Virus record (IMG/VR): IMGVR_UViG_3300044701_003160
Location: 62,001 to 126,000 of that record
Reading direction: 5' to 3' (one strand)
Length of the DNA: 64,000 nt
In this document: positions 6,959 through 55,624 of the stretch, in pieces
Layout of the letters: each line of letters begins with the position of its first letter
How positions within the stretch are numbered: the first letter of the stretch is position 1
Program-made: the position numbers and the translations under genes
Notes under the pieces: model-generated
Told to the model about the DNA's origin: nothing
The model's database searches: none
What the model saw: only the letters and a program-made list of their open reading frames with translations

Positions 6959-6962
6959 CTAC

Positions 6963-32508: not shown

Positions 32509-32672
32509 TGAGAAAGAAACTTCTTCCCATTCTCATTCTTCTGAGACTTCTAATAAATGATGGTCTCTTTATGGAAAACCGAAGGACTCAACCTAAACCT
32601 CAACCACCAGAAGTTCGTGCTGCTATTCGTAGAACTTGGAAAAGAGGTAGGAAGTTATTTACGACTCCATAA
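32508..32672 (+). CDS. Small hypothetical protein (54 aa)
   Basis: MRKKLLPILILLRLLINDG...; start overlaps upstream stop. Confidence 0.45.
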   Translation: MRKKLLPILILLRLLINDGLFMENRRTQPKPQPPEVRAAIRRTWKRGRKLFTTP

Positions 32673-33128
32673 AGTACCTTCAGCAACTCTTCTTCTCAAT
32701 AACCCTTTTTCTACTTTAGTTCCAGGATTACGATAAAGTTCTAATGCCCCCGGAACTTTAGACCATTCTTTATTTCTAAGGACTTTTGTTATGGTATTAA
32801 AATTGGGATTCCCATAAAAATCAGCCCCAAGATTATAAGCAAAAGAAAGAAGTGCTCCTTGTTGATTCTCATTCATTTCGTTCCAATAAGGGATTTTTCG
32901 AAGTGAAGGAAGAAACCGATTTTCAAGATCAAATAGCAATAACCTATTTGCATATTCTTGAGTGATTATTTTTCCCATCTTAAAAGCAGATCCATCAAAA
33001 TCCTTCGTACTTCCCCATCCTACTGTGATTGGAAGTTTTCCAGTTAGTGGATCTGGATATGAGTGTAAATGACATCCTTCAAATTCTTTAATTAGAAAGA
33101 CACCACTTTGAGGAATTTGTGATGTCAT
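32655..33128 (-). CDS. GH24 lysozyme (endolysin)
   Basis: IKEFEGC.L.SYPDP..G..PITVGWGST...ALLSFAYNLG...GLLRRR.AE. Confidence 0.9.
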   Translation of the reverse strand: MTSQIPQSGVFLIKEFEGCHLHSYPDPLTGKLPITVGWGSTKDFDGSAFKMGKIITQEYANRLLLFDLENRFLPSLRKIPYWNEMNENQQGALLSFAYNLGADFYGNPNFNTITKVLRNKEWSKVPGALELYRNPGTKVEKGLLRRRVAEGTLWSRK

Positions 33129-33130
33129 TT

Positions 33131-33835
33131 CTACTTTTTTGCGTAAAAAATTCTACCCCAACCAGTCTTATCCTTATTATTTTCTAACCAACGATACTGA
33201 AGATCGGAACGCTTATAAACCGCACCTTTACCGTTAGTTACTGCACCTGTATATCCATCGTTCAAAGATCCATAGGGGTCATTAATAATATAATCTGTTC
33301 CTTTTTTACCAATTACTACACACATGTGACCGCCAGTAGGAGCAGATAAAGTACCGCGATGAAGAATCCCGATAACAACGGGTCTCCCAGCGGCAAGCTC
33401 ACGATCAAGATCAGCGAAACCAAGATTATACTTAAACTCAGACTTAATTCCATAATCAACAAGAACTTTTGTCTGAACTGAGTGATCAGTCGTATCTCCT
33501 GTTGCGAGAACTTTCTTAAGATAGGCATCGTCGCCCTTTGCTCCTGGAAGTGTTCCTGGTTTGAAGTACTCAAGACACATTGCACAAGAAGAAGAATTGC
33601 AAGTTCTATCTGGTTGAGTATAGTTATCTACCTGAGGAAAATAAGGAACGTTCAGAATTCCTGGTTGGGCTGGGGGTTCTTGTTTGGTTCTGTAGATACT
33701 AACCCAAGTACTGGAGTCATCCATTAACTCGGGTACTTTTGCAAGTAAATCTTTTTCAAGTTGCTCTACTGATGCAACGTGATTTGGATTCTTAGGATCG
33801 TAATGTAAAAAGAAATTGTGAAGATCAATTTGCAT
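33131..33835 (-). CDS. Peptidase C39-like protein
   Basis: LNVPYFPQ.DN...RTCNSSSCAM...GGHM.VVIG...IINDPYG. Confidence 0.8.
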   Translation of the reverse strand: MQIDLHNFFLHYDPKNPNHVASVEQLEKDLLAKVPELMDDSSTWVSIYRTKQEPPAQPGILNVPYFPQVDNYTQPDRTCNSSSCAMCLEYFKPGTLPGAKGDDAYLKKVLATGDTTDHSVQTKVLVDYGIKSEFKYNLGFADLDRELAAGRPVVIGILHRGTLSAPTGGHMCVVIGKKGTDYIINDPYGSLNDGYTGAVTNGKGAVYKRSDLQYRWLENNKDKTGWGRIFYAKK

Positions 33836-33865: not shown

Positions 33866-34027
33866 TTAACGAGCATACTCATTAATCTTATCGAGTACCA
33901 TATTCAGGTACTGATCTGCAAGCGATTTGGGATCTGAGGTATAACCAATATGTTCGTTTTGTAGTTTCTGCTTTAACTTTAAGACTTGACATTTCATCTC
34001 ATCTTTTGTTAATTGTCCCCTTGGCAT
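33866..34027 (-). CDS. Small hypothetical protein (53 aa)
   Basis: MPRGQLTKDEMKCQVLKLKQKL...; CTAAATA upstream. Confidence 0.55.
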   Translation of the reverse strand: MPRGQLTKDEMKCQVLKLKQKLQNEHIGYTSDPKSLADQYLNMVLDKINEYAR

Positions 34028-34088
34028 TATACTAAAAAACTCTGATTCTTTATTTAGAAACAGAGTTTAAGTATTATTGCTTATTATA

Positions 34089-34616
34089 TCAAACTGGTGT
34101 GGTTTCCCTCACAGTTGATTTTACATATTCTAGAACTGCTTCTGGTGTTGATTCCTCATAAGGATCAGTCGGAGCATTATCTTGCCTTCCTGTTTCCTCA
34201 AAGAGTTTCTCAATAATCCCATTATCTACCACAGCAGCATATCTCCAAGAACGCTCACCAAAACCAAGATTGGTCTTGGCAACGAGTTGACCCATAGAAC
34301 GAGTGAAGTAAGCGTTGCCATCAGGAATTAGTTGTACGTTTTGAATGTTTTGATCTTGTGCCCAAGCATTCATCGTAAAAGCGTCATTAACAGAAATGCA
34401 GTAAATAGCATCGATGCCAAGGTCCCTGAATGTTCCATAGTTCTCCTCAAATCCTGGAAGTTGATATGCACTACAAGTGGGAGTAAACGCACCGGGAAGT
34501 GAGAAAATTACTACACGCTTGTTGTTAAAGAGTTCGGCAGAAGTACGAGTTACGAATTCACCTGCCTCACGGAAAATAAATTCTACTTGAGGAATTTGAT
34601 AACCTTCTCTACGCAT
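34089..34616 (-). CDS. Type II peroxiredoxin
   Basis: VVIFSLPGAFTPTCS...CISVNDAF.M.AW...PDGN..FT...RSWRYA. Confidence 0.92.
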   Translation of the reverse strand: MRREGYQIPQVEFIFREAGEFVTRTSAELFNNKRVVIFSLPGAFTPTCSAYQLPGFEENYGTFRDLGIDAIYCISVNDAFTMNAWAQDQNIQNVQLIPDGNAYFTRSMGQLVAKTNLGFGERSWRYAAVVDNGIIEKLFEETGRQDNAPTDPYEESTPEAVLEYVKSTVRETTPV

Positions 34617-34627
34617 AATACCCTCCA

Positions 34628-34738
34628 TCAGAATACGCCAGGAATAATTTGTCCAGTCAGTGCATAAGCACCCATAGCAGCGACGACACCAATCATCGCA
34701 AACCAACCATTAATACGCTCAGCCTTTTCGTTAAACAT
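34628..34738 (-). CDS. hli: High-light-inducible protein (36 aa)
   Basis: MFNEKAERINGWFAMIGVVAAMGAYALTGQIIPGVF: AExxNGxxAMIG motif; missed by ORF track. Confidence 0.9.
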   Translation of the reverse strand: MFNEKAERINGWFAMIGVVAAMGAYALTGQIIPGVF

Positions 34739-34749
34739 TGTTTTTTTCC

Positions 34750-34836
34750 TCAATAAGTTTCAGAAAGTTGATTGACAGAATGTGCAAGAAGCACGAAAAA
34801 AGAAATACTAGTTACAGTAAAAATGAGTTCGCTCAT
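34750..34836 (-). CDS. Small hydrophobic peptide (28 aa) between hli genes
   Basis: MSELIFTVTSISFFVLLAHSVNQLSETY; start overlaps upstream stop. Confidence 0.5.
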   Translation of the reverse strand: MSELIFTVTSISFFVLLAHSVNQLSETY

Positions 34837-35045
34837 TAGATCACACCAAAGAAGAGGTGGCCTGTGAGTGCATAAGAAATAATTGCTGCAACGAATCCCA
34901 GCATCGCAGTACGGCCATTCAGTCGCTCTGCTCTTTCAGCATAAGTCTCAAGTGCATAACGCTCAGCATCAGTCTGAGAGATATACATCTGAGGTTCTTT
35001 GGCAAACATATTCTGCTGCCCACGCTCATTTGTTGTAACGGTCAT
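34836..35045 (-). CDS. hli: High-light-inducible protein
   Basis: AERLNGRTAMLGF; TTNERGQQNMFAKEP N-terminus. Confidence 0.93.
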   Translation of the reverse strand: MTVTTNERGQQNMFAKEPQMYISQTDAERYALETYAERAERLNGRTAMLGFVAAIISYALTGHLFFGVI

Positions 35046-35072
35046 TTTAGTTTTATTAAGAACTGTAACAAT

Positions 35073-35110
35073 ATTATATAGGAAAAATAAAGGGGCGTCA
35101 AGCCCCTTAT
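35073..35110 (-). terminator. pstS terminator overlapping hli promoter
   Basis: AAGGGGC-ttgac-GCCCCTT-T-rich; TTGACG-N17-TATAAT. Confidence 0.8.
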
Positions 35111-35118
35111 GTAAGAAT

Positions 35119-36084
35119 TTACTGACCGATACGCTTCACGGCAAGTCGTGATTTATTAAGAATGCTACCTGCAAGAGGAACATAACCCAAATCATCAGCA
35201 ATCATTTGTGCCTTTGCACTCAGAGCATAGTTGAGTGCCTGTTGAATATCACCTGCTTTCCTAGCACTATTACCAGTCTTATAGGCAAGAACCCAAGTCA
35301 GAGTGGAGATAGGATATGCACCAGAGGCAGAAGGATTGGGATTTTCACCAGCAAGATTTGCATCCAGTTTAATGGAGTTAAGAGCAATAGCACCAGACTT
35401 AGCAGTAGGAAGAACAAACTGCCCTGCCTTATTTTGAAGAGCAGCAACTTGCAGTTTGTTCGACTTCACAAATCCAGTATTTACATAACCAATTGAACCA
35501 GCAGTTTGGCGAATTGTTCCAGAGACACCTTCGTTTCCTTTACCACCAAGACCAACGGGCCAATTGACGGACTTACCTACACCAGGTTTCCAACCACCAA
35601 AAGCATCCAGAGAGTTAGTGAATGCAAAAGTAGTTCCAGAACCATCAGAACGATGAACAACAGTCATAGGACCTGCAGCACATCCAACTTGCTTCCAATC
35701 ACGGATACGACCTGAGAAAATATCCACAGTTTGCTTCTGAGTGAGTTTCAGAGAGCATCCTGCTTTGTTATAGGCAATCGCAATCGTTCCACCCACCATA
35801 GGGATTTGAACGACACCACGCTTCACTTTAGATGCCTCTTTTGACGAGATAGGTTCGTCAGTTGCTCCGAAGTCAACTGTACCCGCAACGAATTGACGGA
35901 CACCAGCACCAGAACCAACCGACTGGTAGTTTACACGATTTCCAGATGATTGTGCATAATCTTGGAACCAACGCTGATAGAGAGGTGCAGGAAAGGTTGC
36001 ACCAGCACCATTAATAGGGGGTCCGGCAATTGCCGCAACAGGAGCAGCAACTAGACCAGCAGCAATAAGGTTTTTAAGTTTCAT
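35119..36084 (-). CDS. pstS: Phosphate-binding protein
   Basis: GAGATFPAPLY..W; YQSVGSGAG..QF; HRSDGSGTT; GKGNEGV; YPISTLTW. Confidence 0.95.
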   Translation of the reverse strand: MKLKNLIAAGLVAAPVAAIAGPPINGAGATFPAPLYQRWFQDYAQSSGNRVNYQSVGSGAGVRQFVAGTVDFGATDEPISSKEASKVKRGVVQIPMVGGTIAIAYNKAGCSLKLTQKQTVDIFSGRIRDWKQVGCAAGPMTVVHRSDGSGTTFAFTNSLDAFGGWKPGVGKSVNWPVGLGGKGNEGVSGTIRQTAGSIGYVNTGFVKSNKLQVAALQNKAGQFVLPTAKSGAIALNSIKLDANLAGENPNPSASGAYPISTLTWVLAYKTGNSARKAGDIQQALNYALSAKAQMIADDLGYVPLAGSILNKSRLAVKRIGQ

Positions 36085-36143
36085 AAAAATTTGTTTAGAA
36101 GTGAAATAGACTTCTTAGAAATCATAAGAGAAGATGAAAAATA

Positions 36144-36176
36144 AGTCCACTAAGATTTGGTTAAGAAGTTCATAAC
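36144..36176 (-). promoter_or_regulatory. Pho-box-like direct repeats upstream of pstS
   Basis: GTTATGA / CTTAACC / CTTAGTG at an 11-bp period. Confidence 0.55.
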
Positions 36177-36179
36177 ATA

Positions 36180-36208
36180 AAAAAGCACCCAAAGAATGGG
36201 TGCTTTCA
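36180..36208 (-). terminator. Porin terminator
   Basis: AAAGCACCCA-ttctt-TGGGTGCTTT-TTT. Confidence 0.8.
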
Positions 36209-36228
36209 CTCAGATTATGAGTAATTTA

Positions 36229-37710
36229 TCAGAAGGTGAACTTGGTCTGAACCACTCCACCCCAGGAAGATTCACCTCGGAACCTTTGGTCGTTGCTCAC
36301 ATAGAAGAGAGCAGGAGTGATGCTGATGTTATCAGATACACGATACTTATAGAAGATTTCAAGCATCGTGGCATCATCACCAATGAATTCAGAATTACCA
36401 GGTTGACCAACGGCAACACCAGCGGTATTACCTTGAGCAAATACATCAGACCACTGAAGTCCAACGAACCAAGAATCAGAATCGGTAGCACCAGTCTTAG
36501 AACCGTCACCACTTACACCATTGTAACCATAACCAGCTGAGATAGAAGGAACAAACCCACTCTCAGAAGGTTGCCAGTAAGCATTCAGAGCAACGCTATT
36601 GCTTTCCTGACCAGCAGCAAGGGCACCAGAACCGCCTCCAAGGGCATTAAAGGTACGAACACGACTGCCTTCAGTACCATAACGGTAAGCAACAGCAGCA
36701 CCCCACTGAGGAGCACGATAGCCAACCTGAGCAAGGAGGTTGATTCCAGAATCAGAGTTGAATGCACCTGTCTGAGAACTGTCACCATCTTGGGAAACAT
36801 AATTCAGACCAGCAACAAATCCACCTTGACCTTTCTTGGTGGGTTGCTTCCACTGAGCACCAACACCAGCACCAGTTGCCTTGTTATAAACACCAGAGGC
36901 ACCGCCAAGTTGGAAGAAGTCCAGGATTTCCGACTTATAAGCAGAAGGAACCCAAGCCATTTCCGTGTTACGAACCAGAGGACCAGCAGTCAGAGTTACA
37001 CTCTTACTAACTGGGAACTGATAGTAAAGACGGTCAATTGTAACCTGATCAGCAAGGGATTCTGCCTTATCAAGTTTGAACAGAGAAGAACTGGAACCAA
37101 AAGGATCGCTACTGAAGTTACCGGAACGCAGACGAGTGCGGAGCAGGTCCTTACCAGTGAACGAGGTATCAAAGTTCAGACGAACATCATAATTAAATGC
37201 AGTATTACCCACATCGACACCTTTGTTAGTTTCAAGACCAGGAACTCCACCAAGAACAAAGTTTACCTCACCCTTGAGTTTAGTTGTGGTGGAGAATTGT
37301 GTTGCTTCCAAGTTTCCAACACGATTTTCCAGACCATCAACACGACCCTTGAGTACGGCAAGTTCACTCTTGAATTCGTCCAGCAGTTTCCGAAGTTCAT
37401 CTGTAGTTTCAGTTACACGATCCAAGCAAGCATTCAGAAGAGCAGCTGCTTCATAACGGGTCATTGCCTGGCCACCAACAAAAGTGCCATTAGGATAACC
37501 AGCAACGCAACCATAACGCTCTACAAGATTGCTGAGTGCCTGATATGCCCAATCAGAAGGTTGAACATCAGTAAATTGTGTAATGCTAGTAACCTGGGCA
37601 GCAGAGGCATACTTGTTGACATCCTCAATATTGAGTTCTGCAGCATTCACCGCAGGAGCAACAAGACCCAGTGCAACAGGCACGAGCATCAGTTGTTTGA
37701 GAAAATTCAT
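36229..37710 (-). CDS. Cyanobacterial Som-type outer-membrane porin (SLH + carbohydrate-selective porin barrel)
   Basis: Signal peptide; SLH motif FTDVQPSDWAYQAL..LVERYGCVAGYPNGTF...TRYEAAA; coiled coil; FSTTTKL.GE; terminal ...TKFTF. Confidence 0.93.
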   Translation of the reverse strand: MNFLKQLMLVPVALGLVAPAVNAAELNIEDVNKYASAAQVTSITQFTDVQPSDWAYQALSNLVERYGCVAGYPNGTFVGGQAMTRYEAAALLNACLDRVTETTDELRKLLDEFKSELAVLKGRVDGLENRVGNLEATQFSTTTKLKGEVNFVLGGVPGLETNKGVDVGNTAFNYDVRLNFDTSFTGKDLLRTRLRSGNFSSDPFGSSSSLFKLDKAESLADQVTIDRLYYQFPVSKSVTLTAGPLVRNTEMAWVPSAYKSEILDFFQLGGASGVYNKATGAGVGAQWKQPTKKGQGGFVAGLNYVSQDGDSSQTGAFNSDSGINLLAQVGYRAPQWGAAVAYRYGTEGSRVRTFNALGGGSGALAAGQESNSVALNAYWQPSESGFVPSISAGYGYNGVSGDGSKTGATDSDSWFVGLQWSDVFAQGNTAGVAVGQPGNSEFIGDDATMLEIFYKYRVSDNISITPALFYVSNDQRFRGESSWGGVVQTKFTF

Positions 37711-37773
37711 AAATGTGTTTTTTTGTTAAACGACAAGTGTTAAGAATTATAACTAATTCTCAACAACGTATTT

Positions 37774-37802
37774 AGTATAGTCGGTAACTTCAGTCTTGTC
37801 AA
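37774..37802 (-). promoter_or_regulatory. Porin sigma70-type promoter
   Basis: TTGACA-N17-TATACT. Confidence 0.75.
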
Positions 37803-38593
37803 GTGCTTTGTTGAGAAGATGATTCCGATACTCTACCAAGGTATGGATTATACTCTGTAATTTGATCTATTGTCAATTCAGAACCTTTTTGAGACCAGAA
37901 CCCAAGTATTGCATCGTGACTATTTTTATGAAAAACATCTATATGTTCAGGATGAATTGAAGAACCAAGTTCAATCTTATAAAGGAATAACGGAGTTGCA
38001 TAAGTTACTCCTGAATTGTAAATCAAATCATCAGCAACTGGTCTTGGTTTAACTCCATTATCCAGTTTATACTTATCTCCACGAATATGATTCCTAATAA
38101 GTTTTTCTGCATGATGCCTAGTAATTACATAACAAGCAGTTGAAAAATCATTTACAAATCTTGTATGAACTGGAACATGAATATCTCCAGTACAAATGAT
38201 TGCAAGTTGAATTACATCCCAAGCATAAGGAGCTCTTGCAATAAAATCCTGCCAAGCAAAATTCCAATATCTTGCAATATCAATATTGCAATCATCTTCC
38301 ATAATAATTGCATAAGGACTATCAGAAGTCTCATACCAGTATTTGATTGCCTTAAGATGAGATGTTACACAACCAATTTCACCAGAGCTCATCATATCAG
38401 GATACTTACCTTTGATAATACCACTTAGATCATCTTCACGACCATCATATGCAGAGATACGTGTATAATTTTCAAGTTCCCAATACTTAAATTGATCCTC
38501 CATATATTGTTTTCTTTCTGGTTGTCCGTCCAGATTGAGATAATATATTGGACCAAAGTTTTTAAGTTTATATACTGATTTATTTTTATCCAT
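37799..38593 (-). CDS. Glycosyltransferase family 25-like
   Basis: YYLNLD...ER...RISAYDG...GEIGC..SHL.A...IMEDD. Confidence 0.85.
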   Translation of the reverse strand: MDKNKSVYKLKNFGPIYYLNLDGQPERKQYMEDQFKYWELENYTRISAYDGREDDLSGIIKGKYPDMMSSGEIGCVTSHLKAIKYWYETSDSPYAIIMEDDCNIDIARYWNFAWQDFIARAPYAWDVIQLAIICTGDIHVPVHTRFVNDFSTACYVITRHHAEKLIRNHIRGDKYKLDNGVKPRPVADDLIYNSGVTYATPLFLYKIELGSSIHPEHIDVFHKNSHDAILGFWSQKGSELTIDQITEYNPYLGRVSESSSQQST

Positions 38594-39530
38594 CGATAAC
38601 TTGCTGAATATTTGGCAGATAGTAATTTTCTAACATTCTACACCATTCAAACTCTTTTGCATAGTTAATAATTTCTTGACGATTGTTTATGGAATATTTT
38701 CTATTTTCAGATATAACATTTTCTACAAATTTTATATCATTAATTTTTTCTTCAGGTATAACACTAATAAATTTATTATTTAAATCCAAATTAGCAGTTG
38801 CCCATTCACTTACAACAACACCAAGGCCCGCAGAAAATGCTTCAAGACAAACTAATGGATGTGCCTCACCATCAGAAAGTAAGATAAGATTTGCATATTG
38901 AGTTAATTTTTTATGAACATCATCTTTAGACCATTCGCCAAGATAATTTTTTTTAACATCAAATCTAGCGTCAGCAATATTTCCAGCATACCAAACAGAT
39001 TCAATATCCTGAAAAAGAAATTGACGTTTTCTATAATCTATTTTTGCAAGATAGATTGATCTATCAGGATAAGTTGGTTTATCGGTTATTTCAAATAATT
39101 TACAGTTAACTCCATTTGGATTTAAATAGAGTCTTTCATCTGGAATATCAGCAAGGTCTTTATAAATTTTATTAATTCCTACAGACAACCCAAAGACATT
39201 TGGTTTAATTCTAGAGAAATGATCAAATACTCTTTCCTTATAACCACCCATTAATTCGGGTCGTTCAATATAAGCAAAGTGCGTAGTGACTGCACAAGGA
39301 TACTGAATAAATTCATAGATTGGAACCCAATCATCATAATTAATATGAACAAAATCAGGACGAAATTGGTTAATCATATTGATAATTTGATAGGGATCAC
39401 CAATATTAATAATTTGAACTTCATGACCCATTTCTTCTAAGGTCATTTTCATATCCCAAATTAAACTTTCAACAGCACCCCACCCAATTGGAGGAATAGG
39501 AAGTGCTGGTCCAATAATACTAATTCGCAT
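38586..39530 (-). CDS. GT-B (GT4-like) glycosyltransferase
   Basis: PIPPIGWGAVES; PNGV; SDGEAHPLVCLEAFSAGLGVV. Confidence 0.8.
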   Translation of the reverse strand: MRISIIGPALPIPPIGWGAVESLIWDMKMTLEEMGHEVQIINIGDPYQIINMINQFRPDFVHINYDDWVPIYEFIQYPCAVTTHFAYIERPELMGGYKERVFDHFSRIKPNVFGLSVGINKIYKDLADIPDERLYLNPNGVNCKLFEITDKPTYPDRSIYLAKIDYRKRQFLFQDIESVWYAGNIADARFDVKKNYLGEWSKDDVHKKLTQYANLILLSDGEAHPLVCLEAFSAGLGVVVSEWATANLDLNNKFISVIPEEKINDIKFVENVISENRKYSINNRQEIINYAKEFEWCRMLENYYLPNIQQVIDG

Positions 39531-51394: not shown

Positions 51395-51467
51395 TGCTCC
51401 TTGCGTGGATCGAACACGCCTCAGGCGAATTATGAGTTCGCTGCATTCACCAGATTGCTAAAGGAGC
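51395..51467 (-). tRNA. tRNA with CAT anticodon (Ile2 or Met)
   Basis: GCTCCTT/AAGGAGC acceptor; GCGAA-CTCATAA-TTCGC; GTTCGAT T-loop; no encoded CCA. Confidence 0.88.
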
Positions 51468-51468
51468 G

Positions 51469-51882
51469 TTATTCATTTAATTGTCGTCTTTGTTTATGAT
51501 ACCCAACTTTTTTATTTAAAGTTTTATAAGTATCTGTTAAAGTATGACAATTAGGACACAAAACTCTTAAATTTTCTTTGTATCCATTTTCTCTTGATCC
51601 ATCTATGTGATCTATTTCAAGATAGATAATACCGTTTGTTGGATTTGGTTTTCCCCATCCACATTCGGAACACTTATATCCTGCCTCTTCAAGCATAAAT
51701 CTTCTAACAAAATCACTTGGTCTTCCATCTCTAACTTTGCCAGTTATTTTTTTAGATAACCAATCAGATATATTTTGTTTATAATAATCTTCTTGTTGGC
51801 ATTTATTAGAGCAGTAAATACCTTTTCCTTGTGAAGGAGAATACTTAAAGTTTTTTTTGCAGTTTTTACAAGTTCCTATCAT
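51469..51882 (-). CDS. HNH endonuclease
   Basis: CxxC...YCSNKC; CSECG...EIDHIDG...N.KENLRVLCPNCH. Confidence 0.9.
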   Translation of the reverse strand: MIGTCKNCKKNFKYSPSQGKGIYCSNKCQQEDYYKQNISDWLSKKITGKVRDGRPSDFVRRFMLEEAGYKCSECGWGKPNPTNGIIYLEIDHIDGSRENGYKENLRVLCPNCHTLTDTYKTLNKKVGYHKQRRQLNE

Positions 51883-51936
51883 CGATGTTAGACCACTCTA
51901 CACTTTTATTTATACTCTAAGTGTAGTTTAGAGTAA

Positions 51937-52024
51937 TACGAGTGCCTGGATTCGAACCAGGTCAAAGCCGCTAATCTGGCGGAAAGAGTTTATAAGACTC
52001 CTCTGACTACCAAGTCTCACTCGC
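51937..52024 (-). tRNA. tRNA-Ile(TAT) with long variable arm
   Basis: GCGAGTG/CACTCGT; GGAGT-CTTATAA-ACTCT; variable hairpin CCGC/GCGG; 88 nt. Confidence 0.8.
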
Positions 52025-52063
52025 ATAAAACCAAATCTATAATAGCGGATCTGGAACGCTTCG

Positions 52064-52291
52064 TCAAGACCCTTCTTCGTGATCGGTATGAATTTTGACT
52101 ATCTCCTCAAAATCCACATTTGACTCTTCACATATACTAACCACATCTTTATAAGGAACCATTACAGCATTTCCGTGTTTGCTAGTAATAAGAAATGATT
52201 CACCATTCTCAACTCTATTCATTAGAGCATCAAAGTCTGATTGAAATTCTTCGATTGTAAATGATTGAAGTTGGTTTAGTTCTTGATTCAT
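52064..52291 (-). CDS. Phd/YefM antitoxin-like protein
   Basis: FTIEEFQSDFDALMNRVENGESFLIT.KHGNAVMVPY fits the Phd N-terminal pattern. Confidence 0.55.
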   Translation of the reverse strand: MNQELNQLQSFTIEEFQSDFDALMNRVENGESFLITSKHGNAVMVPYKDVVSICEESNVDFEEIVKIHTDHEEGS

Positions 52292-52314
52292 TTTTATAAT
52301 ATAAAGATTATAAG

Positions 52315-52388
52315 TCGGGACGATAGGATTTGAACCTACGGCCTGACGCTCCCAAAGCGCCTGCTCTACCAAACTGAGCTACGTCCCG
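52315..52388 (-). tRNA. tRNA-Pro(TGG)
   Basis: CGGGACG/CGTCCCG; anticodon loop TTTGGGA. Confidence 0.95.
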
Positions 52389-52412
52389 ATTTCTTTGTGT
52401 ATCCTATCAGGT

Positions 52413-52571
52413 TTATCGAACCCTGTCAACCACCTGAAGAACACCGTGAGCATAAAAGAAAAGGAGTACTGAACCGATTGTTGCTGATATTATTGTAGCA
52501 GTTTTATTGTGCCTGTCAATGGCTTTTGCAACTGACTGGTCGATCATTTCTTGAACTTCTTCAGGTGTCAT
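52413..52571 (-). CDS. Small membrane protein (52 aa)
   Basis: MTPEEVQEMIDQSVAKAIDRHNK...IGSVLLFFYAHGVL. Confidence 0.55.
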   Translation of the reverse strand: MTPEEVQEMIDQSVAKAIDRHNKTATIISATIGSVLLFFYAHGVLQVVDRVR

Positions 52572-52716
52572 TTTTATTACCAAGAAATTTTGCCAGAGGA
52601 TCTCTTTTTGTTCTAATTATTTCACACGCTCTTTTATAAAACATATTATCAGTATTACCTGATGATTCAAACGTTTCCTTTATTTTAACCCAATTTTGGT
52701 ATGTGTGATCATCCAT
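52561..52716 (-). CDS. Small hypothetical protein (51 aa)
   Basis: MDDHTYQNWVKIKETFESSGNTDNMFYKRACEI... Confidence 0.6.
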   Translation of the reverse strand: MDDHTYQNWVKIKETFESSGNTDNMFYKRACEIIRTKRDPLAKFLGNKNDT

Positions 52717-52803
52717 TTGGGATCTATACGTTATTATTACTAATTTAGTTTAATTAACAATCTTATTTTGTCAAGTATGTGTGGATATCATCATAATTTT
52801 AAA

Positions 52804-52888
52804 CGGTGAGGAAAGGATTCGAACCTTCGGATGCTTTCACATCGACTGTTTTCAAGACAGTTGCCTTAAACCACTCGGCCACCTCACC
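52804..52888 (-). tRNA. tRNA-Ser(TGA)
   Basis: GGTGAGG/CCTCACC; ACTGT-CTTGAAA-ACAGT; long variable arm. Confidence 0.95.
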
Positions 52889-53243
52889 ATATTATTTCCA
52901 ATAAACCAGCGTGTATTTTACGATGACACGGAGAACAGAGCATATAACATTTATCTATTTCTGTTTGGATTGTCTCCCATTTGTATCCTTTTCCCGCTAA
53001 GTAAGAAACTTCCTTTTTCTTATTTTCTGCCTCAATATGATGAAAATCAAAACAACAGGGAGGATGGTAATCTCCACAAGCATCACAACAACCTTTTTCA
53101 AGTTTTAATTGATTTAGTTTTTCAACCATCAACTTTTTATTATTATATTCTCTTTGGTATTTAATTTTTTTAAATTCTCCAGATTGTTTTTGAGCCCAAA
53201 GACGTTGTGCTTCTTTTTGCTTTTCTTTATCTTTATAAGGCAT
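52884..53243 (-). CDS. HNH endonuclease
   Basis: CDACG..HPPCCFDFHH...EIDKCYMLCSPCHRKIH; stop overlaps tRNA-Ser 5' end. Confidence 0.85.
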   Translation of the reverse strand: MPYKDKEKQKEAQRLWAQKQSGEFKKIKYQREYNNKKLMVEKLNQLKLEKGCCDACGDYHPPCCFDFHHIEAENKKKEVSYLAGKGYKWETIQTEIDKCYMLCSPCHRKIHAGLLEIIW

Positions 53244-53284
53244 ATCATTTAAAAGGTTCTAATTTATTTATAAAAAATTAGAAC

Positions 53285-53536
53285 TTAACGGACTTCGAAA
53301 TCAAGACGCCTCACTTTTCTTTGGCGTCTTTGTTCTTGCCAGGCAATATCCTGGGAGGTTAACACGTTTGTTTTTGGTGTTTCCTTTAATGAGTTTAGCA
53401 TTACAATACGGGATAAGTCAACTGCCGAAATCTTATCTCCTCTAATTGTTGCCATATTGGGACATCCACAACTAATAGTTTTTGAAGAGTGCCCCACTAA
53501 TTCTTTACTGCAATCTTTGCATCTTATTGATATCAT
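53285..53536 (-). CDS. Hypothetical Zn-ribbon protein
   Basis: CKDC...CGCPN. Confidence 0.65.
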   Translation of the reverse strand: MISIRCKDCSKELVGHSSKTISCGCPNMATIRGDKISAVDLSRIVMLNSLKETPKTNVLTSQDIAWQEQRRQRKVRRLDFEVR

Positions 53537-53551
53537 TTTTTGTTACCGTAA

Positions 53552-53986
53552 TCACTGTAAATGTGCTCTTAATTGCCAAACAAATTTTCCGTGAGATTCC
53601 ATCAAATCTTGAACTAGATTGGCAGTTGCATAAGATTTTTGAGTTTCAGACTCTTCCGAAATTTCACCCATTAACTCACAAAATTTAGTATTGTTATCCA
53701 AAAGTTCTTGAAGCATCTCTTTTGCTCCCGTAGAACTTGTTGCTTCTTTGATTTGAGTTACTTCAAGCATTCTTGAAAGAGAACTTAAAGGTTTTACATT
53801 TAAGTATCTCATATGTTCGGAGAGCCTGTCAATCTCTTCAAACATCGTTTCATATTGTCCACCAAACAGTTGATGAAGTTGAGTAAAGTCTTCACCTACA
53901 ACATTCCAGTGAAATGCCCAGGTTTTATGGAACAAAACAAAAAGTGATGACTGAGCATCACTGAGTAATTTATAAAGTTTTTCCAT
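53552..53986 (-). CDS. dps: Dps/ferritin-like DNA-protection protein
   Basis: KTWAFHWNVVG.DF.QLH.LF..QY...EIDRLSEH ferroxidase pattern. Confidence 0.9.
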   Translation of the reverse strand: MEKLYKLLSDAQSSLFVLFHKTWAFHWNVVGEDFTQLHQLFGGQYETMFEEIDRLSEHMRYLNVKPLSSLSRMLEVTQIKEATSSTGAKEMLQELLDNNTKFCELMGEISEESETQKSYATANLVQDLMESHGKFVWQLRAHLQ

Positions 53987-54014
53987 TATACTTTTTTTCA
54001 AGTATTTATGCAAA

Positions 54015-54087
54015 TGGGAGCAGAGGGATTCGAACCCCCGACATTCTGCGTGTAAAGCAGACGCTGCTACCGCTGAGCTATGCTCCC
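54015..54087 (-). tRNA. tRNA-Val(TAC)
   Basis: GGGAGCA/TGCTCCC; TCTGC-TTTACAC-GCAGA. Confidence 0.95.
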
Positions 54088-54090
54088 TTG

Positions 54091-54162
54091 TCCTCTGTCT
54101 GGGAATCGAACCCAGTATCCGTGTGTGTTGTCCACCCGTCCTTACCAATAGACTACCAGAGG
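54091..54162 (-). ncRNA. tRNA-like element with non-canonical anticodon arm
   Basis: CCTCTG/CAGAGG acceptor, GTCT..TGGTAA..GGAC D-arm, CTGGG-TTCGATT-CCCAG T-arm; anticodon arm GGTGG-ACAACAC-ACACG lacks U33 and pairs poorly. Confidence 0.7.
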
Positions 54163-54164
54163 TA

Positions 54165-54236
54165 CTCCACAACCTGGATTCGAACCAGGGACCAATCGAT
54201 TAACAGTCGATGGCTCTACCGCTGAGCTATTGTGGA
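54165..54236 (-). tRNA. tRNA-Asn(GTT)
   Basis: TCCACAA/TTGTGGA; ATCGA-CTGTTAA-TCGAT. Confidence 0.95.
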
Positions 54237-54244
54237 ATGTTCTA

Positions 54245-54448
54245 CTACTTAGAACTTACAAAATCATTAATCGTTTCTGCTTGCTTAAGAACATCCTGTA
54301 GAGTTGGAAACTCTGGATAATCCATCTTCACAGTATTTGAAGAATTTAGATTCCAATAACGAGCAGTATCCATTTCAGTACTGAACTGATCATTTAGCAT
54401 ATTATATGCTTGCTTGAAGATTTCAAAACGAAGTTCGTAAGGTGTCAT
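54245..54448 (-). CDS. Hypothetical protein
   Basis: MTPYELRFEIFKQA...AETINDFVS; GGAG RBS. Confidence 0.7.
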   Translation of the reverse strand: MTPYELRFEIFKQAYNMLNDQFSTEMDTARYWNLNSSNTVKMDYPEFPTLQDVLKQAETINDFVSSK

Positions 54449-54495
54449 TTATTTACTCCCGTGTGTTTGTGTGTTTAAAGAACCTGAAGGTTCAG

Positions 54496-54566
54496 AGCGA
54501 GTGACGGGGATCGAACCCGTGACAAGAGCTTGGAAGGCTCGCATGTTACCGCTACACCACACTCGC
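54496..54566 (-). tRNA. tRNA-Gly(TCC)
   Basis: GCGAGTG/CACTCGC; anticodon loop CTTCCAA; own promoter TTGACA-N17-TATGAT (54576-54604). Confidence 0.95.
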
Positions 54567-54605
54567 AATAAGACAATCATAAGGTATAAAACCCAGATTG
54601 TCAAG

Positions 54606-54687
54606 TGCCCAAAAGAGGACTTGAACCTCCACAGATAAATCTACAGGAACCTAAACCCTGCGCGTCTACCAATTCCGCCATTTGGGC
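54606..54687 (-). tRNA. tRNA-Leu(TAG)
   Basis: GCCCAAA/TTTGGGC; CAGGG-TTTAGGT-TCCTG; variable arm. Confidence 0.93.
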
Positions 54688-54690
54688 GGA

Positions 54691-54763
54691 TGGAGAATAG
54701 GAGACTCGAACTCCTGACACCCGCCTTGCAAAGGCCGCGCTCTACCAACTGAGCTAATTCCCC
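54691..54763 (-). tRNA. tRNA-Ala(TGC)
   Basis: GGGGAAT/ATTCTCC with G3:U70; loop TTTGCAA. Confidence 0.93.
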
Positions 54764-54840
54764 AAGATGGAGTAAGTGTGATATACCTCATAAGGATATA
54801 ACAGTGACTTACCCTCTATCACTTTTATATATTACACCAG

Positions 54841-55392
54841 TTATTCGATGGTGTCAAGTCTTAATTTAGAGTGTATCTCTCTGTGACAATTAGAACAAAC
54901 ACATATACATTTGTCAAGTTCCTTTTTTTGGTCTTCCCATTTTCGTATTTTAATGTTACCAAAGTTTTTATCTTTTTGTGATGGGTCTATATGATGAAAC
55001 TCTAAAGCATCGATACACTTATCATATCCGCACCTCTCACATTTTCCACCTTTATAATCAACTGCTCTTTTTTTATTATTTTGCCACCTTTCTACAGAAT
55101 ATTTGTTGTGGCATTTTTTACAATTTGCTTGCCATATTTTTTTACTTTCACGCCAATATCCAGTTTTTTCTGTCAAAAGAACTTTACATTTAGAGCAATT
55201 TTGAATTGGTTTACCATCTACTTTTAAAATTGGATTTAAAATATATCCATCTTTAAATGTTTTATGTTTTGTTTTTAATTGATATTTGTCTAACCAATAC
55301 CTAACAGTGGTTTTTCCTTTACTTTCAAGTTTAGATATTTGTGAGGTTGACATTCCATCTTCAATATATTCTATTAATTTTTGTTTATCCAT
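54841..55392 (-). CDS. HNH endonuclease with N-terminal HTH
   Basis: YKGGKCERCGY.KC..ALEFHH.DP...ELDKC..VCSNCHREIH; contains TTGACA-N17-TAATAT promoter (54829-54857) for downstream tRNAs. Confidence 0.9.
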   Translation of the reverse strand: MDKQKLIEYIEDGMSTSQISKLESKGKTTVRYWLDKYQLKTKHKTFKDGYILNPILKVDGKPIQNCSKCKVLLTEKTGYWRESKKIWQANCKKCHNKYSVERWQNNKKRAVDYKGGKCERCGYDKCIDALEFHHIDPSQKDKNFGNIKIRKWEDQKKELDKCICVCSNCHREIHSKLRLDTIE

Positions 55393-55438
55393 TAGTCCAA
55401 AGGAAATATATTATTATTTATACAATTGAACTATTTAA

Positions 55439-55511
55439 CAGGCGTACCTGGATTTGAACCAGGGATAAGGCTTTAGAAGAGCCGTGTGATAATCCACTTC
55501 ACCATACGCCC
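55439..55511 (-). tRNA. tRNA-Arg(TCT)
   Basis: GGGCGTA/TACGCCT; GGCT-CTTCTAA-AGCC. Confidence 0.92.
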
Positions 55512-55624
55512 ATAAGGAACCTCCCTGTTTGTGCATCGTTGAGAGGCATAGGAGGTGTGGGATTTATGAGAAGTTTGGACCTCCTCCACCCGTGAAACTA
55601 CTATAAGGCATCAGAGCACTAAAG

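What the first reader, a model, noticed from the sequence alone, without database searches (positions are those of the whole stretch)
35119..37802. Phage-encoded Som-type porin directly upstream of pstS
Seen: a full-length SLH-porin (signal peptide, terminal Phe) next to pstS, each with its own promoter region and terminator, both visibly more GC-rich than the flanks. Known: phage pstS is common and cyanobacterial Som porins respond to nutrient limitation, but to my knowledge porins are not a standard cyanophage auxiliary gene. Inference: a two-part phosphate-uptake module (outer-membrane entry plus periplasmic capture), or a receptor-altering superinfection-exclusion protein.
Basis: partly seen in the sequence, partly recalled or inferred. 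Interest (0 to 1): 0.75.

Follow-up and report, generated by a model that had tools for sequence, protein, structure and literature searches.

The report
Freshwater cyanophage outer-membrane porin beside pstS
A T4-like virus of freshwater picocyanobacteria carries its own full-length outer-membrane pore gene, taken long ago from its host along with the neighbouring phosphate-capture gene pstS; hundreds of related viruses carry this pore, so these viruses probably re-equip the infected cell's nutrient entry at the outer membrane.

Summary
On the minus strand, 36229-37710 encodes a 493-aa Som-type porin: signal peptide, SLH domain, coiled-coil stalk, 16-strand OprB-type barrel, terminal Phe. 35119-36084 encodes PstS. 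Each gene has a promoter-like site and a hairpin terminator.

It is not host contamination:
- Third-codon GC (0.34 porin, 0.28 pstS) matches the phage (0.25), not host porins (0.78).
- 403 IMG/VR contigs encode relatives; all 80 fetched loci lie among phage genes.
- 58 distinct phage porins form one clade (99/99), at most 67% identical to any of 301 host-family genomes.
- Median dN/dS is 0.25.
- Phage late-type promoter motifs precede the gene, and lake metatranscriptomes hold phage-type porin pieces.

The nearest host porins sit directly upstream of host pstS, with the same terminator-then-Pho-box spacer. The pair therefore looks like a captured host cassette. In marine cyanomyophages a small barrel protein (Pfam Phage_OMP, P-SSM2 gp247) fills the same slot.

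The link to phosphate is not obligatory. A terminator separates the two genes, the Pho box serves only pstS, and pstS follows the porin in 24 of 61 informative loci.

Verdict: a real, widespread, undescribed auxiliary gene. It is a new variant of the known cyanophage "outer-membrane barrel plus PstS" theme. Its substrate and role are unproven.

The parts
37774..37802 (-). Sigma-70-type promoter-like site TTGACA-17-TATACT for the porin. The late-type motif CTAAATA (37775-37769) overlaps its -10 hexamer.
   Evidence: scores it 11 of 12. The same TTGACA...TATACTAAATA layout stands upstream of the porin in related loci L006, L025, L026, L057, L059, L070 and L076. In the genome, 13 of 34 CTAAATA copies lie 10-80 nt upstream of a same-strand ORF, where about 1 is expected. 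PMC2984593 describes NATAAATA late promoters and overlapping early-plus-late promoters in cyanomyoviruses.
37738..37765 (-). Predicted hairpin in the porin 5' leader (12-bp stem, 4-nt loop). Its 3' arm holds the conserved TTCTTAAC.
   Evidence: The window folds at -13.4 kcal/mol, z -2.8. A hairpin at the same place is predicted in 8 of 9 type-A loci, with different inner pairs. RNAalifold on the MAFFT alignment found none. Function unknown.
36229..37710 (-). Porin gene, 493 aa.
- Signal peptide: aa 1-23.
- SLH domain: aa 46-98, nt 37417-37575, with the TRYE motif.
- Stalk helix: aa 104-138, nt 37297-37401.
- 16-strand beta-barrel: aa 143-493, nt 36232-37284.
- C-terminus: Phe.
   Evidence: Domains and family: Pfam SLH plus OprB; NF033921 at 302 bits.

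Structure: the AlphaFold2 model has 16 strands and barrel pLDDT of about 80-93. Foldseek matches OprB 4gey, OmpF and OmpM1 8bys at E 1e-11 to 1e-12. The SLH-plus-stalk part matches OmpM1 8bym at E 5.5e-16.

Conservation: median dN/dS is 0.25 over 56 phage copies. The phage copies form one clade at 99/99.
36181..36207 (-). Intrinsic terminator of the porin gene: 11-bp stem, 5-nt loop, T-run.
   Evidence: A hairpin plus T-run is kept at this place in all 17 distinct porin-pstS spacers, with compensatory stem changes such as GCACCCA/TGGGTGC, CCACCCC/GGGGTGG and GGGGG/CCCCT. Host porin-pstS spacers have the same element.
36136..36165 (-). Pho-box-like site: CTTAACCA aat CTTAGTGG act TATTTTTC, three 8-mers with 3-nt linkers. 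A -10-like TATGAT follows at 36126-36121.
   Evidence: CTTAACCAAATCTTAGT(G/T)GA is nearly invariant in the porin-pstS spacers. A second variant, CTTAACTATCTTTTAACTT, occurs in L049, L053, L064, L075 and L078. The cyanobacterial SphR/PhoB site is three or more 8-bp repeats of consensus CTTAACCT with 3-bp linkers (PMC1906773). Host spacers carry CTTGACCnnnCCTTAACGnnnGCATAACG at the same position. A degenerate-consensus scan of this AT-rich genome alone does not discriminate.
35119..36084 (-). pstS, periplasmic phosphate-binding protein, 321 aa with a signal peptide.
   Evidence: Pfam PBP_like_2 at E 3e-42; TIGR00975 at 276 bits against a cut-off of 205; phrog_5385. Median dN/dS is 0.19. It falls in a freshwater-phage clade of 17 (SH-aLRT 99, quick tree), apart from the marine cyanophage pstS.
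35090..35108 (-). Intrinsic terminator after pstS. It overlaps the promoter-like site of the next gene, hli (35101-35073).

Best explanation
SHOWN
- The porin gene is a long-resident, selected gene of a lineage of T4-like cyanophages found mainly in freshwater metagenomes.
- It is intact, conserved, codon-adapted to the phage, preceded by phage promoter motifs, and seen in RNA libraries.
- Its nearest relatives are Som-type porins of Cyanobium and freshwater Synechococcus, many of which stand directly upstream of the host's own pstS.

INFERRED
- Origin: the phage pair porin - terminator - Pho box - pstS is a copy of that host cassette, most simply captured as one piece.
- Export: during infection the host Sec and BAM machineries would export the protein and fold it into the outer membrane. 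There it would form a trimer-type 16-strand channel tied to the peptidoglycan layer by its SLH domain.
- Role: it would keep up or raise the inflow of small inorganic nutrients into the periplasm. In this phage that is most likely phosphate, which phage PstS then captures and passes to the host PstCAB transporter for viral DNA synthesis.
- Regulation: it is split. The porin has an early-type plus late-type phage promoter and should be made whatever the phosphate status. pstS sits behind a terminator and a Pho box, and should respond to the host's phosphate-starvation regulator.
For: Architecture: signal peptide, SLH with the TRYE motif, stalk helix, 16-strand barrel and terminal Phe.

A real phage gene:
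- 403 IMG/VR contigs encode relatives, and all 80 fetched loci carry phage genes around the porin.
- The window itself is T4-like: baseplate, tail, ribonucleotide reductase and 11 tRNAs.
- GC3 is phage-like.
- The 58 phage porins are monophyletic at 99/99, in 100% of bootstrap trees.
- The best identity in 301 host-family genomes is 67%.
- Median dN/dS is 0.25. The SLH domain and constriction loop L3 are the most conserved parts; outer loops L1, L6 and L7 are the most variable.

Expression:
- Late-type motifs (TATAAATA, GATAAATA or CTAAATA) stand at one aligned position before the porin in many loci, and a sigma-70 type site in others.
- Four lake or freshwater metatranscriptomes hold 400-600-nt pieces at 92-94% identity across the porin. 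One 5' end matches the phage-type leader.

Link to phosphate:
- pstS is the commonest gene after the porin, in 24 of 61 informative loci.
- The nearest host porins lie 177-265 nt upstream of host pstS, with the same terminator and Pho box.
- Both freshwater-phage pstS clades group with host pstS genes from such cassettes.
- Prochlorococcus porin PhoE rises more than 15-fold under low phosphate (PMC3349580).
- Marine cyanomyophages have a Phage_OMP barrel gene in the same slot. P-SSM2 g247 is induced by phosphate limitation.
Against: - No direct evidence of substrate, localisation or benefit.
- A strong, conserved terminator separates the porin from pstS, and the Pho box lies after the porin. 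The porin is therefore not predicted to respond to phosphate.
- In 37 of 61 informative loci the next gene is not pstS: ferritin/Dps-like 12, hli 11, epimerase 6, others 8.
- The curated family name is 'iron uptake porin'.
- pstS beside the porin has two separate origins while the porin has one. The pairing has therefore been rebuilt or exchanged at least once.
- The RNA evidence rests on assembled contigs from RNA libraries and on relatives of this phage. DNA carry-over is not excluded.
Confidence: 0.55

Rival explanations
1. General or other-nutrient channel. The porin is a stand-alone auxiliary gene that raises outer-membrane permeability for small solutes in general, or for iron. Its position next to pstS is a leftover of the host cassette with no functional coupling.
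For: - It has its own promoter and terminator.
- 37 of 61 informative loci lack pstS after it, and 12 have a ferritin/Dps-like gene there, as does isolate S-SRM01 nearby.
- NF033921 is named 'iron uptake porin'.
- The porin occupies at least two genome positions among relatives.
Against: - pstS is still the single commonest neighbour.
- The nearest host homologues are the pstS-linked ones.
- The same slot in marine phages holds a phosphate-limitation-induced barrel gene.
- The family name comes from one Synechocystis protein and a subfamily-level model.
Confidence: 0.25
2. Envelope remodelling rather than nutrition. Three variants are possible:
- The phage porin replaces or dilutes host porins that serve as phage receptors, giving superinfection exclusion or less loss of progeny on debris.
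- It protects the cell against grazing.
- It changes the SLH-mediated tie between outer membrane and cell wall to stabilise the cell or time lysis.
For: - The SLH domain is the most conserved part (entropy 0.28), and the outer loops L1, L6 and L7 are the most variable (1.2-1.6).
- Marine S-PM2 and estuarine S-CREM1 encode shorter SLH proteins in which Pfam finds no barrel. The S-PM2 one is reported as among the earliest and most abundant transcripts, and a protective role was proposed.
- The gene lies in a region of glycosyltransferases and near the lysozyme and C39-peptidase pair.
- From memory, lambdoid phages use the porins Lc and NmpC for conversion.
Against: - The full barrel, the constriction loop L3 (entropy 0.37) and the beta-signal are kept under purifying selection. 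A tether or decoy alone would not need that.
- Variable outer loops are the normal pattern in any porin.
- No receptor is known for these phages.
Confidence: 0.15
3. Passenger gene without function in the phage.
For: It lies in a hyperplastic, gene-shuffling region.
Against: - 76 complete ORFs of 487-509 aa were found among 80 loci, with no stops; the remaining copies are cut short at a contig end.
- Median dN/dS is 0.25 at a median dS of 0.8.
- Codon usage is ameliorated.
- Phage promoter motifs are conserved.
Confidence: 0.04
4. Assembly artefact: a host fragment joined to a phage contig.
For: The record is a metagenome-assembled viral genome, and the region is more GC-rich than its flanks.
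Against: - GT25-porin-pstS-hli synteny recurs in diverged contigs from other samples: L023, L025, L026, L037, L049, L070, L076 and L078.
- GC3 is 0.28-0.34, against 0.66-0.78 in hosts.
- No host genome searched exceeds 67% identity.
- Freshwater runs from two studies hold 0.68-0.79 of the stretch's words.
Confidence: 0.01

Closest known systems
Som-type porin to pstS cassette of freshwater Cyanobium/Synechococcus, the counterpart of the phosphate-stress porin called PhoE in Prochlorococcus
   Same: - Same domain order and length class.
- Same gene order and strand.
- Same spacer layout: terminator hairpin, then three 11-bp-spaced Pho-box repeats, then pstS.
- Nearest relatives in both gene trees.
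   Different: - Only 53-67% identical.
- The host porin leader ends in a conserved GGTGTGAGGACCCG motif that the phage copies lack. The phage copies instead carry phage early- and late-type promoter motifs.
- Phage GC3 is 0.34 against 0.78.
- The linker between the signal peptide and the SLH domain is about 16 aa shorter than in many host copies.
Cyanophage Phage_OMP (Pfam PF24653, formerly annotated DUF680; P-SSM2 gp246/gp247) directly upstream of pstS in marine cyanomyophages
   Same: - An outer-membrane beta-barrel gene with a signal peptide and terminal Phe, immediately upstream of pstS on the same strand.
- In S-SM2 the neighbourhood is the same: GT25 - OMP - pstS ... hli.
- gp247 was proposed to act as a porin feeding PstS.
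- One relative, L070, carries both: porin - Phage_OMP - pstS.
   Different: - A different family and size: about 120 aa, with no SLH domain.
- The window's genome has no PF24653 gene.
- According to the literature as I recall it, g247 and pstS respond together to phosphate limitation in P-SSM2. Here a terminator and the Pho box lie between the two genes.
'porin' QPX48248.1 of freshwater Synechococcus phage S-SRM01 (MW015081)
   Same: 72% identical over 95% of the length. It falls inside the phage porin clade.
   Different: - pstS is not next to it; a Dps-family gene lies about 500 nt downstream.
- The paper describing the phage does not mention the porin.
OmpM1 of Veillonella parvula (PDB 8bym/8bys), an outer-membrane attachment porin
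   Same: SLH domain, coiled-coil stalk and 16-strand barrel. The sequence match to SLH plus stalk is E 5.5e-16, and the fold match to the barrel is E 2.5e-11.
   Different: A distant lineage, with 15-16% identity in the barrel. It is a cellular protein, not a viral one.
SLH-domain proteins of cyanophages S-PM2 ('putative S-layer protein') and S-CREM1 ('iron uptake porin')
   Same: Their SLH and stalk region is 49% identical to the window's. The S-PM2 protein is reported as expressed early and abundantly.
   Different: They are only 279-292 aa. Pfam finds no barrel in the S-CREM1 protein; the S-PM2 protein was not scanned.
Porins Lc (phage PA-2) and NmpC of lambdoid phages (recalled from memory, not tested here)
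   Same: Phage-borne general porins expressed in the host outer membrane.
   Different: They belong to the OmpC/OmpF family, have no SLH domain, sit on temperate phages of enterobacteria, and serve lysogenic conversion.

Membership tests
Cyanobacterial Som/SomB-type porin (NCBIfam NF033921 por_somb; Pfam SLH + OprB) | Family model matched over the full length, above the curated cut-off | tested here: met
   NF033921 at 302 bits against a cut-off of 100, profile positions 1-485 of 485. OprB at 57.6 bits against 22.9; SLH at 36.4 against 20.8.
Cyanobacterial Som/SomB-type porin (NCBIfam NF033921 por_somb; Pfam SLH + OprB) | A single N-terminal SLH domain with the conserved TRxE motif, followed by a coiled-coil stalk | tested here: met
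   TRYE at aa 84-87, with R85 and E87 invariant in 40 sequences. Modelled helix at aa 104-138. Match to OmpM1 SLH plus stalk at E 5.5e-16.
Cyanobacterial Som/SomB-type porin (NCBIfam NF033921 por_somb; Pfam SLH + OprB) | C-terminal 16-strand beta-barrel ending in an aromatic residue | tested here: met
   16 strands in the model and barrel pLDDT of about 80-93. Foldseek matches OprB, OmpF and OmpM1. F493 is invariant.
Cyanobacterial Som/SomB-type porin (NCBIfam NF033921 por_somb; Pfam SLH + OprB) | Sec signal peptide and outer-membrane location; channel activity | not testable with these tools
   The leader with ...VNA|AE was read by eye. No predictor or experiment was available.
Cyanophage phosphate module (Phage_OMP/gp247 + PstS under host PhoB control) | Intact pstS of the PstS equivalog family | tested here: met
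   TIGR00975 at 276 bits against 205; phrog_5385 at E 4e-124.
Cyanophage phosphate module (Phage_OMP/gp247 + PstS under host PhoB control) | The upstream barrel gene belongs to Pfam PF24653 Phage_OMP | tested here: not met
   The upstream gene is an SLH + OprB porin. No PF24653 match was found in the genome by family search or tblastn. The family search rang in no control genome, so the tblastn result carries the weight.
Cyanophage phosphate module (Phage_OMP/gp247 + PstS under host PhoB control) | Pho box upstream of the unit | tested here: inconclusive
   A conserved 8+3+8(+3+8) CTTAACC-type motif precedes pstS in all 17 distinct spacers and fits the published consensus. It lies downstream of the porin, so it can serve only pstS. 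Binding was not tested.
Cyanophage phosphate module (Phage_OMP/gp247 + PstS under host PhoB control) | Induction of both genes by phosphate limitation of the host | not testable with these tools
   Needs infection experiments.
Host-derived auxiliary metabolic gene of a phage | Host homologues exist; the phage copies sit in phage context, are under purifying selection and are adapted to phage composition | tested here: met
Conversion porins of temperate lambdoid phages (Lc, NmpC) | OmpC/OmpF-family porin on a temperate phage | tested here: not met
   The family is OprB/SomB, not OmpC. The genome context is T4-like. Lysogeny genes were not searched.

The most novel reading that the evidence does not exclude
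A large lineage of freshwater T4-like cyanophages routinely installs its own peptidoglycan-anchored porin in the outer membrane of the infected cell. Viral control of nutrient acquisition would then start at the outermost barrier, not only at periplasmic binding proteins. The gene came in once, as part of the host's phosphate-stress porin-pstS cassette together with its Pho box. It was then freed from host control: new phage promoters, and loss of the host leader motif. It was also recombined with other partners (pstS of two origins, ferritin/Dps).
Probability: 0.45. Interest if true: 0.7.

Novelty: new variant of a known kind. Interest (0 to 1): 0.58.

Why it matters
Cyanophage pstS is a textbook auxiliary gene, but how phosphate reaches the periplasm of an infected cell has had little attention. 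The one suggestion found in the papers searched is that the small gp247 barrel may be porin-like.

This locus gives a clearer case: a full-length porin of a well-defined host family, present in hundreds of freshwater viral contigs and in one cultured phage, S-SRM01. That makes the question directly testable by outer-membrane proteomics, uptake assays and phage knock-outs.

It also gives a clean example of a regulatory cassette (terminator plus Pho box) carried over from host to virus. Finally, it shows freshwater and marine cyanophages filling the same genomic slot with different outer-membrane proteins.

For freshwater systems, where phosphorus usually limits production, a virus-encoded entry pore could affect how infected picocyanobacteria compete for phosphate.

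Tried and rejected
- A megablast of 5 kb against isolate phages found only a 656-nt peroxiredoxin/hli match. The protein searches were the informative ones.
- A genome-wide scan with the degenerate Pho-box consensus gave about 90 equally good sites in this AT-rich genome, with the pstS site not on top. I dropped it in favour of conservation across loci.
- I first read the conserved TTCTTAAC upstream of the porin as a Pho half-site. Its spacing (14 nt) is wrong, and it forms the 3' arm of a leader hairpin, so I rejected that reading.
- Rfam found nothing relevant in 34000-39000.
- RNAalifold found no consensus structure for the porin leader because MAFFT misaligns the 5' arm. Single-sequence folds were used instead.
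- The PF24653 search of the window's own genome had no positive control. I repeated it with tblastn of four family members.
- Cluster look-ups gave no names or accessions.
I rebuilt the alignment without that row.
- One genome search failed on a wrong handle type.
- I checked whether phage porins lack host outer loops. The length difference lies mostly in the N-terminal linker, not in the barrel.
- The papers on S-SRM01 and S-CREM1 do not mention the porin.
Full report
1. WHAT IS THERE

On the minus strand of the window lie two genes in tandem. 36229-37710 encodes a 493-aa protein and 35119-36084 a 321-aa protein.

The first protein has one SLH domain (aa 46-89) and an OprB-family porin domain (aa 101-493). 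It matches NCBIfam NF033921 (por_somb) end to end at 302 bits against a cut-off of 100. It starts with a Sec-type leader (…LVAPAVNA|AE) and ends in …QTKFTF.

An AlphaFold2 model built on 40 phage and host sequences gives three parts:
- a weakly modelled SLH domain;
- a long helix at aa 104-138;
- a 16-strand barrel at aa 143-493, with pLDDT of about 80-93.

The barrel matches OprB (4gey), OmpF and the SLH-stalk-barrel porin OmpM1 (8bys) at E 1e-11 to 1e-12. The SLH-plus-stalk part matches OmpM1 by sequence at E 5.5e-16.

The second protein is PstS: TIGR00975 at 276 bits against 205, and phrog_5385.

The surroundings are those of a T4-like cyanophage:
- glycosyltransferases upstream;
- hli, a peroxiredoxin, a C39-type peptidase and a lysozyme downstream;
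- baseplate, tail and virion proteins, ribonucleotide reductase and 11 tRNA genes elsewhere in the window.

The window is part of a 219-kb IMG/VR viral genome rated complete by CheckV.

2. SIGNALS AROUND THE GENES

These sites were found:
- Upstream of the porin: TTGACA-17-TATACT at 37802-37774.
- After the porin: an 11-bp-stem terminator at 36207-36181.
- Upstream of pstS: TGGACT-17-TATGAT at 36149-36121.
- After pstS: a terminator at 35108-35090.

Such consensus hits are no commoner here than in shuffled sequence, so on their own they prove little. The support comes from related loci.

In all 17 distinct porin-pstS spacers, three elements are kept:
- the terminator hairpin, with compensatory stem changes;
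- a motif CTTAACCA-aat-CTTAGTGG-act-… (or the variant CTTAACTA-tct-TTTAACTT);
- a -10-like hexamer.

The motif fits the cyanobacterial SphR/PhoB site: three or more 8-bp repeats of consensus CTTAACCT with 3-bp linkers (PMC1906773).

Upstream of the porin, relatives show one of two layouts:
- Type A, as in the window: a sigma-70-type site whose -10 overlaps CTAAATA, followed by a leader hairpin.
- Type B: a tRNA gene, a hairpin, and then TATAAATA, GATAAATA or CTAAATA at one aligned position 33 nt before the ATG.

TATAAATA and NATAAATA are the T4 and cyanomyovirus late promoter, and overlapping early and late promoters are described for cyanomyoviruses (PMC2984593). In this genome, 13 of 34 CTAAATA copies and 16 of 21 TATAAATA copies lie 10-80 nt upstream of a same-strand ORF, where about 4% would be expected.

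The porin therefore carries phage-type expression signals and is a transcription unit of its own. The Pho box can serve only pstS.

3. NOT AN ARTEFACT AND NOT A RECENT IMPORT

The region is more GC-rich than its flanks, but this is a matter of protein composition. GC1 is 0.59 and the Gly+Ala+Arg+Pro share is 0.28-0.34, against 0.19 for the genome.

| Gene set | GC3 |
|---|---|
| Window porin | 0.34 |
| Window pstS | 0.28 |
| Phage genome (mean +/- sd) | 0.254 +/- 0.086 |
| Host porins | 0.78 |
| Host pstS | 0.66 |

(All.)

A pattern search of IMG/VR found 403 contigs encoding a relative. In the 80 best loci the porin always lies among homologues of this phage's genes. The order GT25-porin-pstS-hli recurs in contigs whose porins are only 70-87% identical.

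Among isolates, only freshwater phage S-SRM01 has a full-length copy (72% identical, annotated 'porin'). PHROGs has no family for it.

Runs holding the stretch are mostly freshwater metagenomes. Two separate studies hold 0.68-0.79 of its sampled words.

4. ORIGIN

The nearest cellular homologues are porins of freshwater Cyanobium and Synechococcus, at 53-61% identity. In 301 genomes of that family, 292 have a match, and none exceeds 67%.

In a maximum-likelihood tree of 91 sequences, the 58 distinct phage porins form one clade. Support is ultrafast bootstrap 99 and SH-aLRT 99, and the clade appears in 100% of 200 bootstrap trees. It sits beside two host clades, with 46-50%-identical paralogues as outgroup (quick version). 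One old acquisition is the simplest reading. Host sampling is limited to the best hits.

The closest host porins stand directly upstream of host pstS on the same strand, 177-265 nt away. Their spacer has the same order: terminator hairpin, then three 11-bp-spaced Pho-box repeats (CTTGACC…CTTAACG…CATAACG), then pstS. This holds for L102, L105, L107, L109, L112, L113, L146, L148 and L149. One host genome has porin-pstS-porin (L097/L149), and a contig from another (L092) shows pstS-porin.

In the quick pstS tree (SH-aLRT support only), the genes next to phage porins form two clades:
- 17 sequences including the window's (support 99), which sit in an unresolved group that also holds the host pstS clade from such cassettes;
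- 4 sequences that are sister (support 99) to the pstS of Cyanobium T1B-Tous and C. usitatum.

The marine cyanophage pstS genes fall elsewhere. The pair thus looks like a captured host cassette, whose pstS half was later replaced or re-acquired at least once.

5. IS THE GENE USED?

- All 76 complete phage ORFs are 487-509 aa without interruptions.
- Median pairwise dN/dS is 0.25 for the porin and 0.19 for pstS, at a median dS of about 0.8.
- Within the phage clade, the SLH domain (mean entropy 0.28) and the long loop L3 (0.37) are the most conserved parts. Outer loops L1, L6 and L7 (1.2-1.6) and some periplasmic turns vary most.
- Contigs from four lake or freshwater RNA libraries cover most of the porin, with pieces of 400-600 nt at 92-94% identity. 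One loose 5' end reads exactly like the type-B leader. The glycosyltransferase side has no coverage.

The RNA result supports transcription of phage-type porins in nature. However, these are assembled contigs from relatives, and DNA carry-over cannot be excluded.

6. COMPARISON WITH WHAT IS KNOWN

In marine cyanomyophages (P-SSM2, P-SSM7, S-SSM7, S-SM1, S-SM2), pstS is always directly preceded by one or two genes of Pfam PF24653, 'cyanophage outer membrane protein like beta barrel'. These proteins are about 120 aa, with a signal peptide and terminal Phe. In S-SM2 the neighbourhood is GT25 - OMP - OMP - pstS - phoA … hli.

P-SSM2 g247 is one of two phage genes induced by phosphate limitation, and has been proposed to form a porin feeding PstS (bioRxiv 10.1101/2021.07.20.453049).

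The window's phage has no PF24653 gene. It has the full-length host-type porin in that slot. One relative, L070, has porin - Phage_OMP - pstS.

The idea of an outer-membrane barrel plus PstS is therefore known. What is new is a full Som-type, SLH-anchored porin in that role, widespread in freshwater phages. I found no discussion of it in the papers searched.

Two other phage-borne porins turned up in the searches: an OmpL-like porin next to viral amtB (PMC8115048), and metagenomic 'OmpC' or 'porin O/P' entries in the viral structure library. From memory, there are also Lc and NmpC of lambdoid phages.

7. MECHANISM AND ITS LIMITS

Best reading (confidence 0.55): the phage makes its own outer-membrane channel to sustain entry of small inorganic nutrients, phosphate above all in this genome. 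Phage PstS is added when the host signals phosphate starvation.

The steps from gene to outer-membrane channel are inferred from family membership. The phosphate link is inferred from the host cassette, from the marine analogue, and from the strong induction of the host porin PhoE at low phosphate (PMC3349580).

Against a strict coupling:
- The two genes are separated by a conserved terminator.
- The porin should be expressed regardless of phosphate.
- Of 61 informative non-redundant loci, 24 have pstS after the porin. The others have a ferritin/Dps-like gene (12), hli (11), an epimerase (6), or other genes (8).
- The porin sits at two or more genome positions among relatives.

Rival readings, which remain open:
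- A general or iron-related channel (0.25).
- Envelope remodelling, such as receptor replacement, protection, or modulation of the SLH tether (0.15). This rival draws on the very conserved SLH domain and on the barrel-less SLH proteins of S-PM2 and S-CREM1.

8. VERDICT

The artefact explanation is refuted.

This is a new variant of a known kind of cyanophage auxiliary system. It is common in freshwater viral metagenomes, testable with an existing isolate, and of moderate to high interest.

Noticed in passing
L102, L105, L107, L109, L112, L113, L146, L148, L149 (host loci): 25 nt before each porin ATG and just after each porin stop: Host Cyanobium-type porin leaders end in a nearly invariant CC(C/T)TATCGGTGTGAGGACCCG-ATG. 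A sense-strand ACTCCTCAC…CACACA follows the stop codon. The phage porins have neither. From memory, GTGTGAGGA is complementary to the conserved loop of the sRNA Yfr1, a repressor of som porins in Prochlorococcus. If so, the phage copy would escape that control.
   Followed up: no
window 37738-37765 (-) and the same place in L006, L023, L025, L026, L057, L059, L070: There is a leader hairpin before the porin start. Its outer pairs (AAGAA/TTCTT) are fixed and its inner pairs differ between loci. Z-scores run from -1.3 to -3.5 in seven of the eight folds; the L059 fold is no better than shuffles (z +0.7). No Rfam match.
   Followed up: partly
L005-L012, L022, L051, L052, L055, L056, L065, L067, L072; S-SRM01 locus L001: A second recurrent arrangement has the porin at another genome position, just after a tRNA gene, and directly followed by a ferritin/Dps-like gene (Pfam Ferritin, E 1e-20 to 1e-22). 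In S-SRM01 the Dps-family gene lies about 500 nt downstream of the porin, after two tiny ORFs. This may hint at an iron link.
   Followed up: partly
L070 7485-7844: One relative has a 119-aa PF24653 Phage_OMP gene inserted between the porin and pstS. The terminator and Pho box follow this gene, not the porin.
   Followed up: yes
pstS genes of L016, L017, L023, L046 versus the window's: pstS next to the monophyletic phage porin has two separate origins (59-66% identical to each other). Both are closer to Cyanobium pstS than to marine cyanophage pstS. The spacer with terminator and Pho box is nevertheless the same in both.
   Followed up: partly
window 34836-35045, 34089-34706, 33131-33835, 32655-33128 (all -): Downstream of pstS lie a high-light-inducible protein gene with its own strong promoter-like site, a peroxiredoxin, and a C39-type peptidase plus lysozyme pair (probably the lysis enzymes).
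   Followed up: no
window 51395-55512 (-): An array of 11 tRNA genes. One of them is read as tRNA-Ile with anticodon TAT and is 90 nt long.
   Followed up: no
window 36571-37743 (+): A 390-aa ORF runs antisense through the whole porin gene. It has no family match and is most likely a by-product of the porin's codon composition.
   Followed up: no
L002 (S-CREM1, OP535465) 3935-4813 and 6829-7887: By Pfam, the record's 'iron uptake porin' (292 aa) has only an SLH domain and no barrel. Its 'iron-binding protein' matches the Druantia DruA domain instead.
   Followed up: partly
L084, L088, L094, L095: Contigs binned as Microbacteriaceae, Verrucomicrobia and Chitinophaga MAGs carry a phage-clade porin with hli beside it (L084) or Cyanobium-type porins. 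They are probably misbinned.
   Followed up: partly
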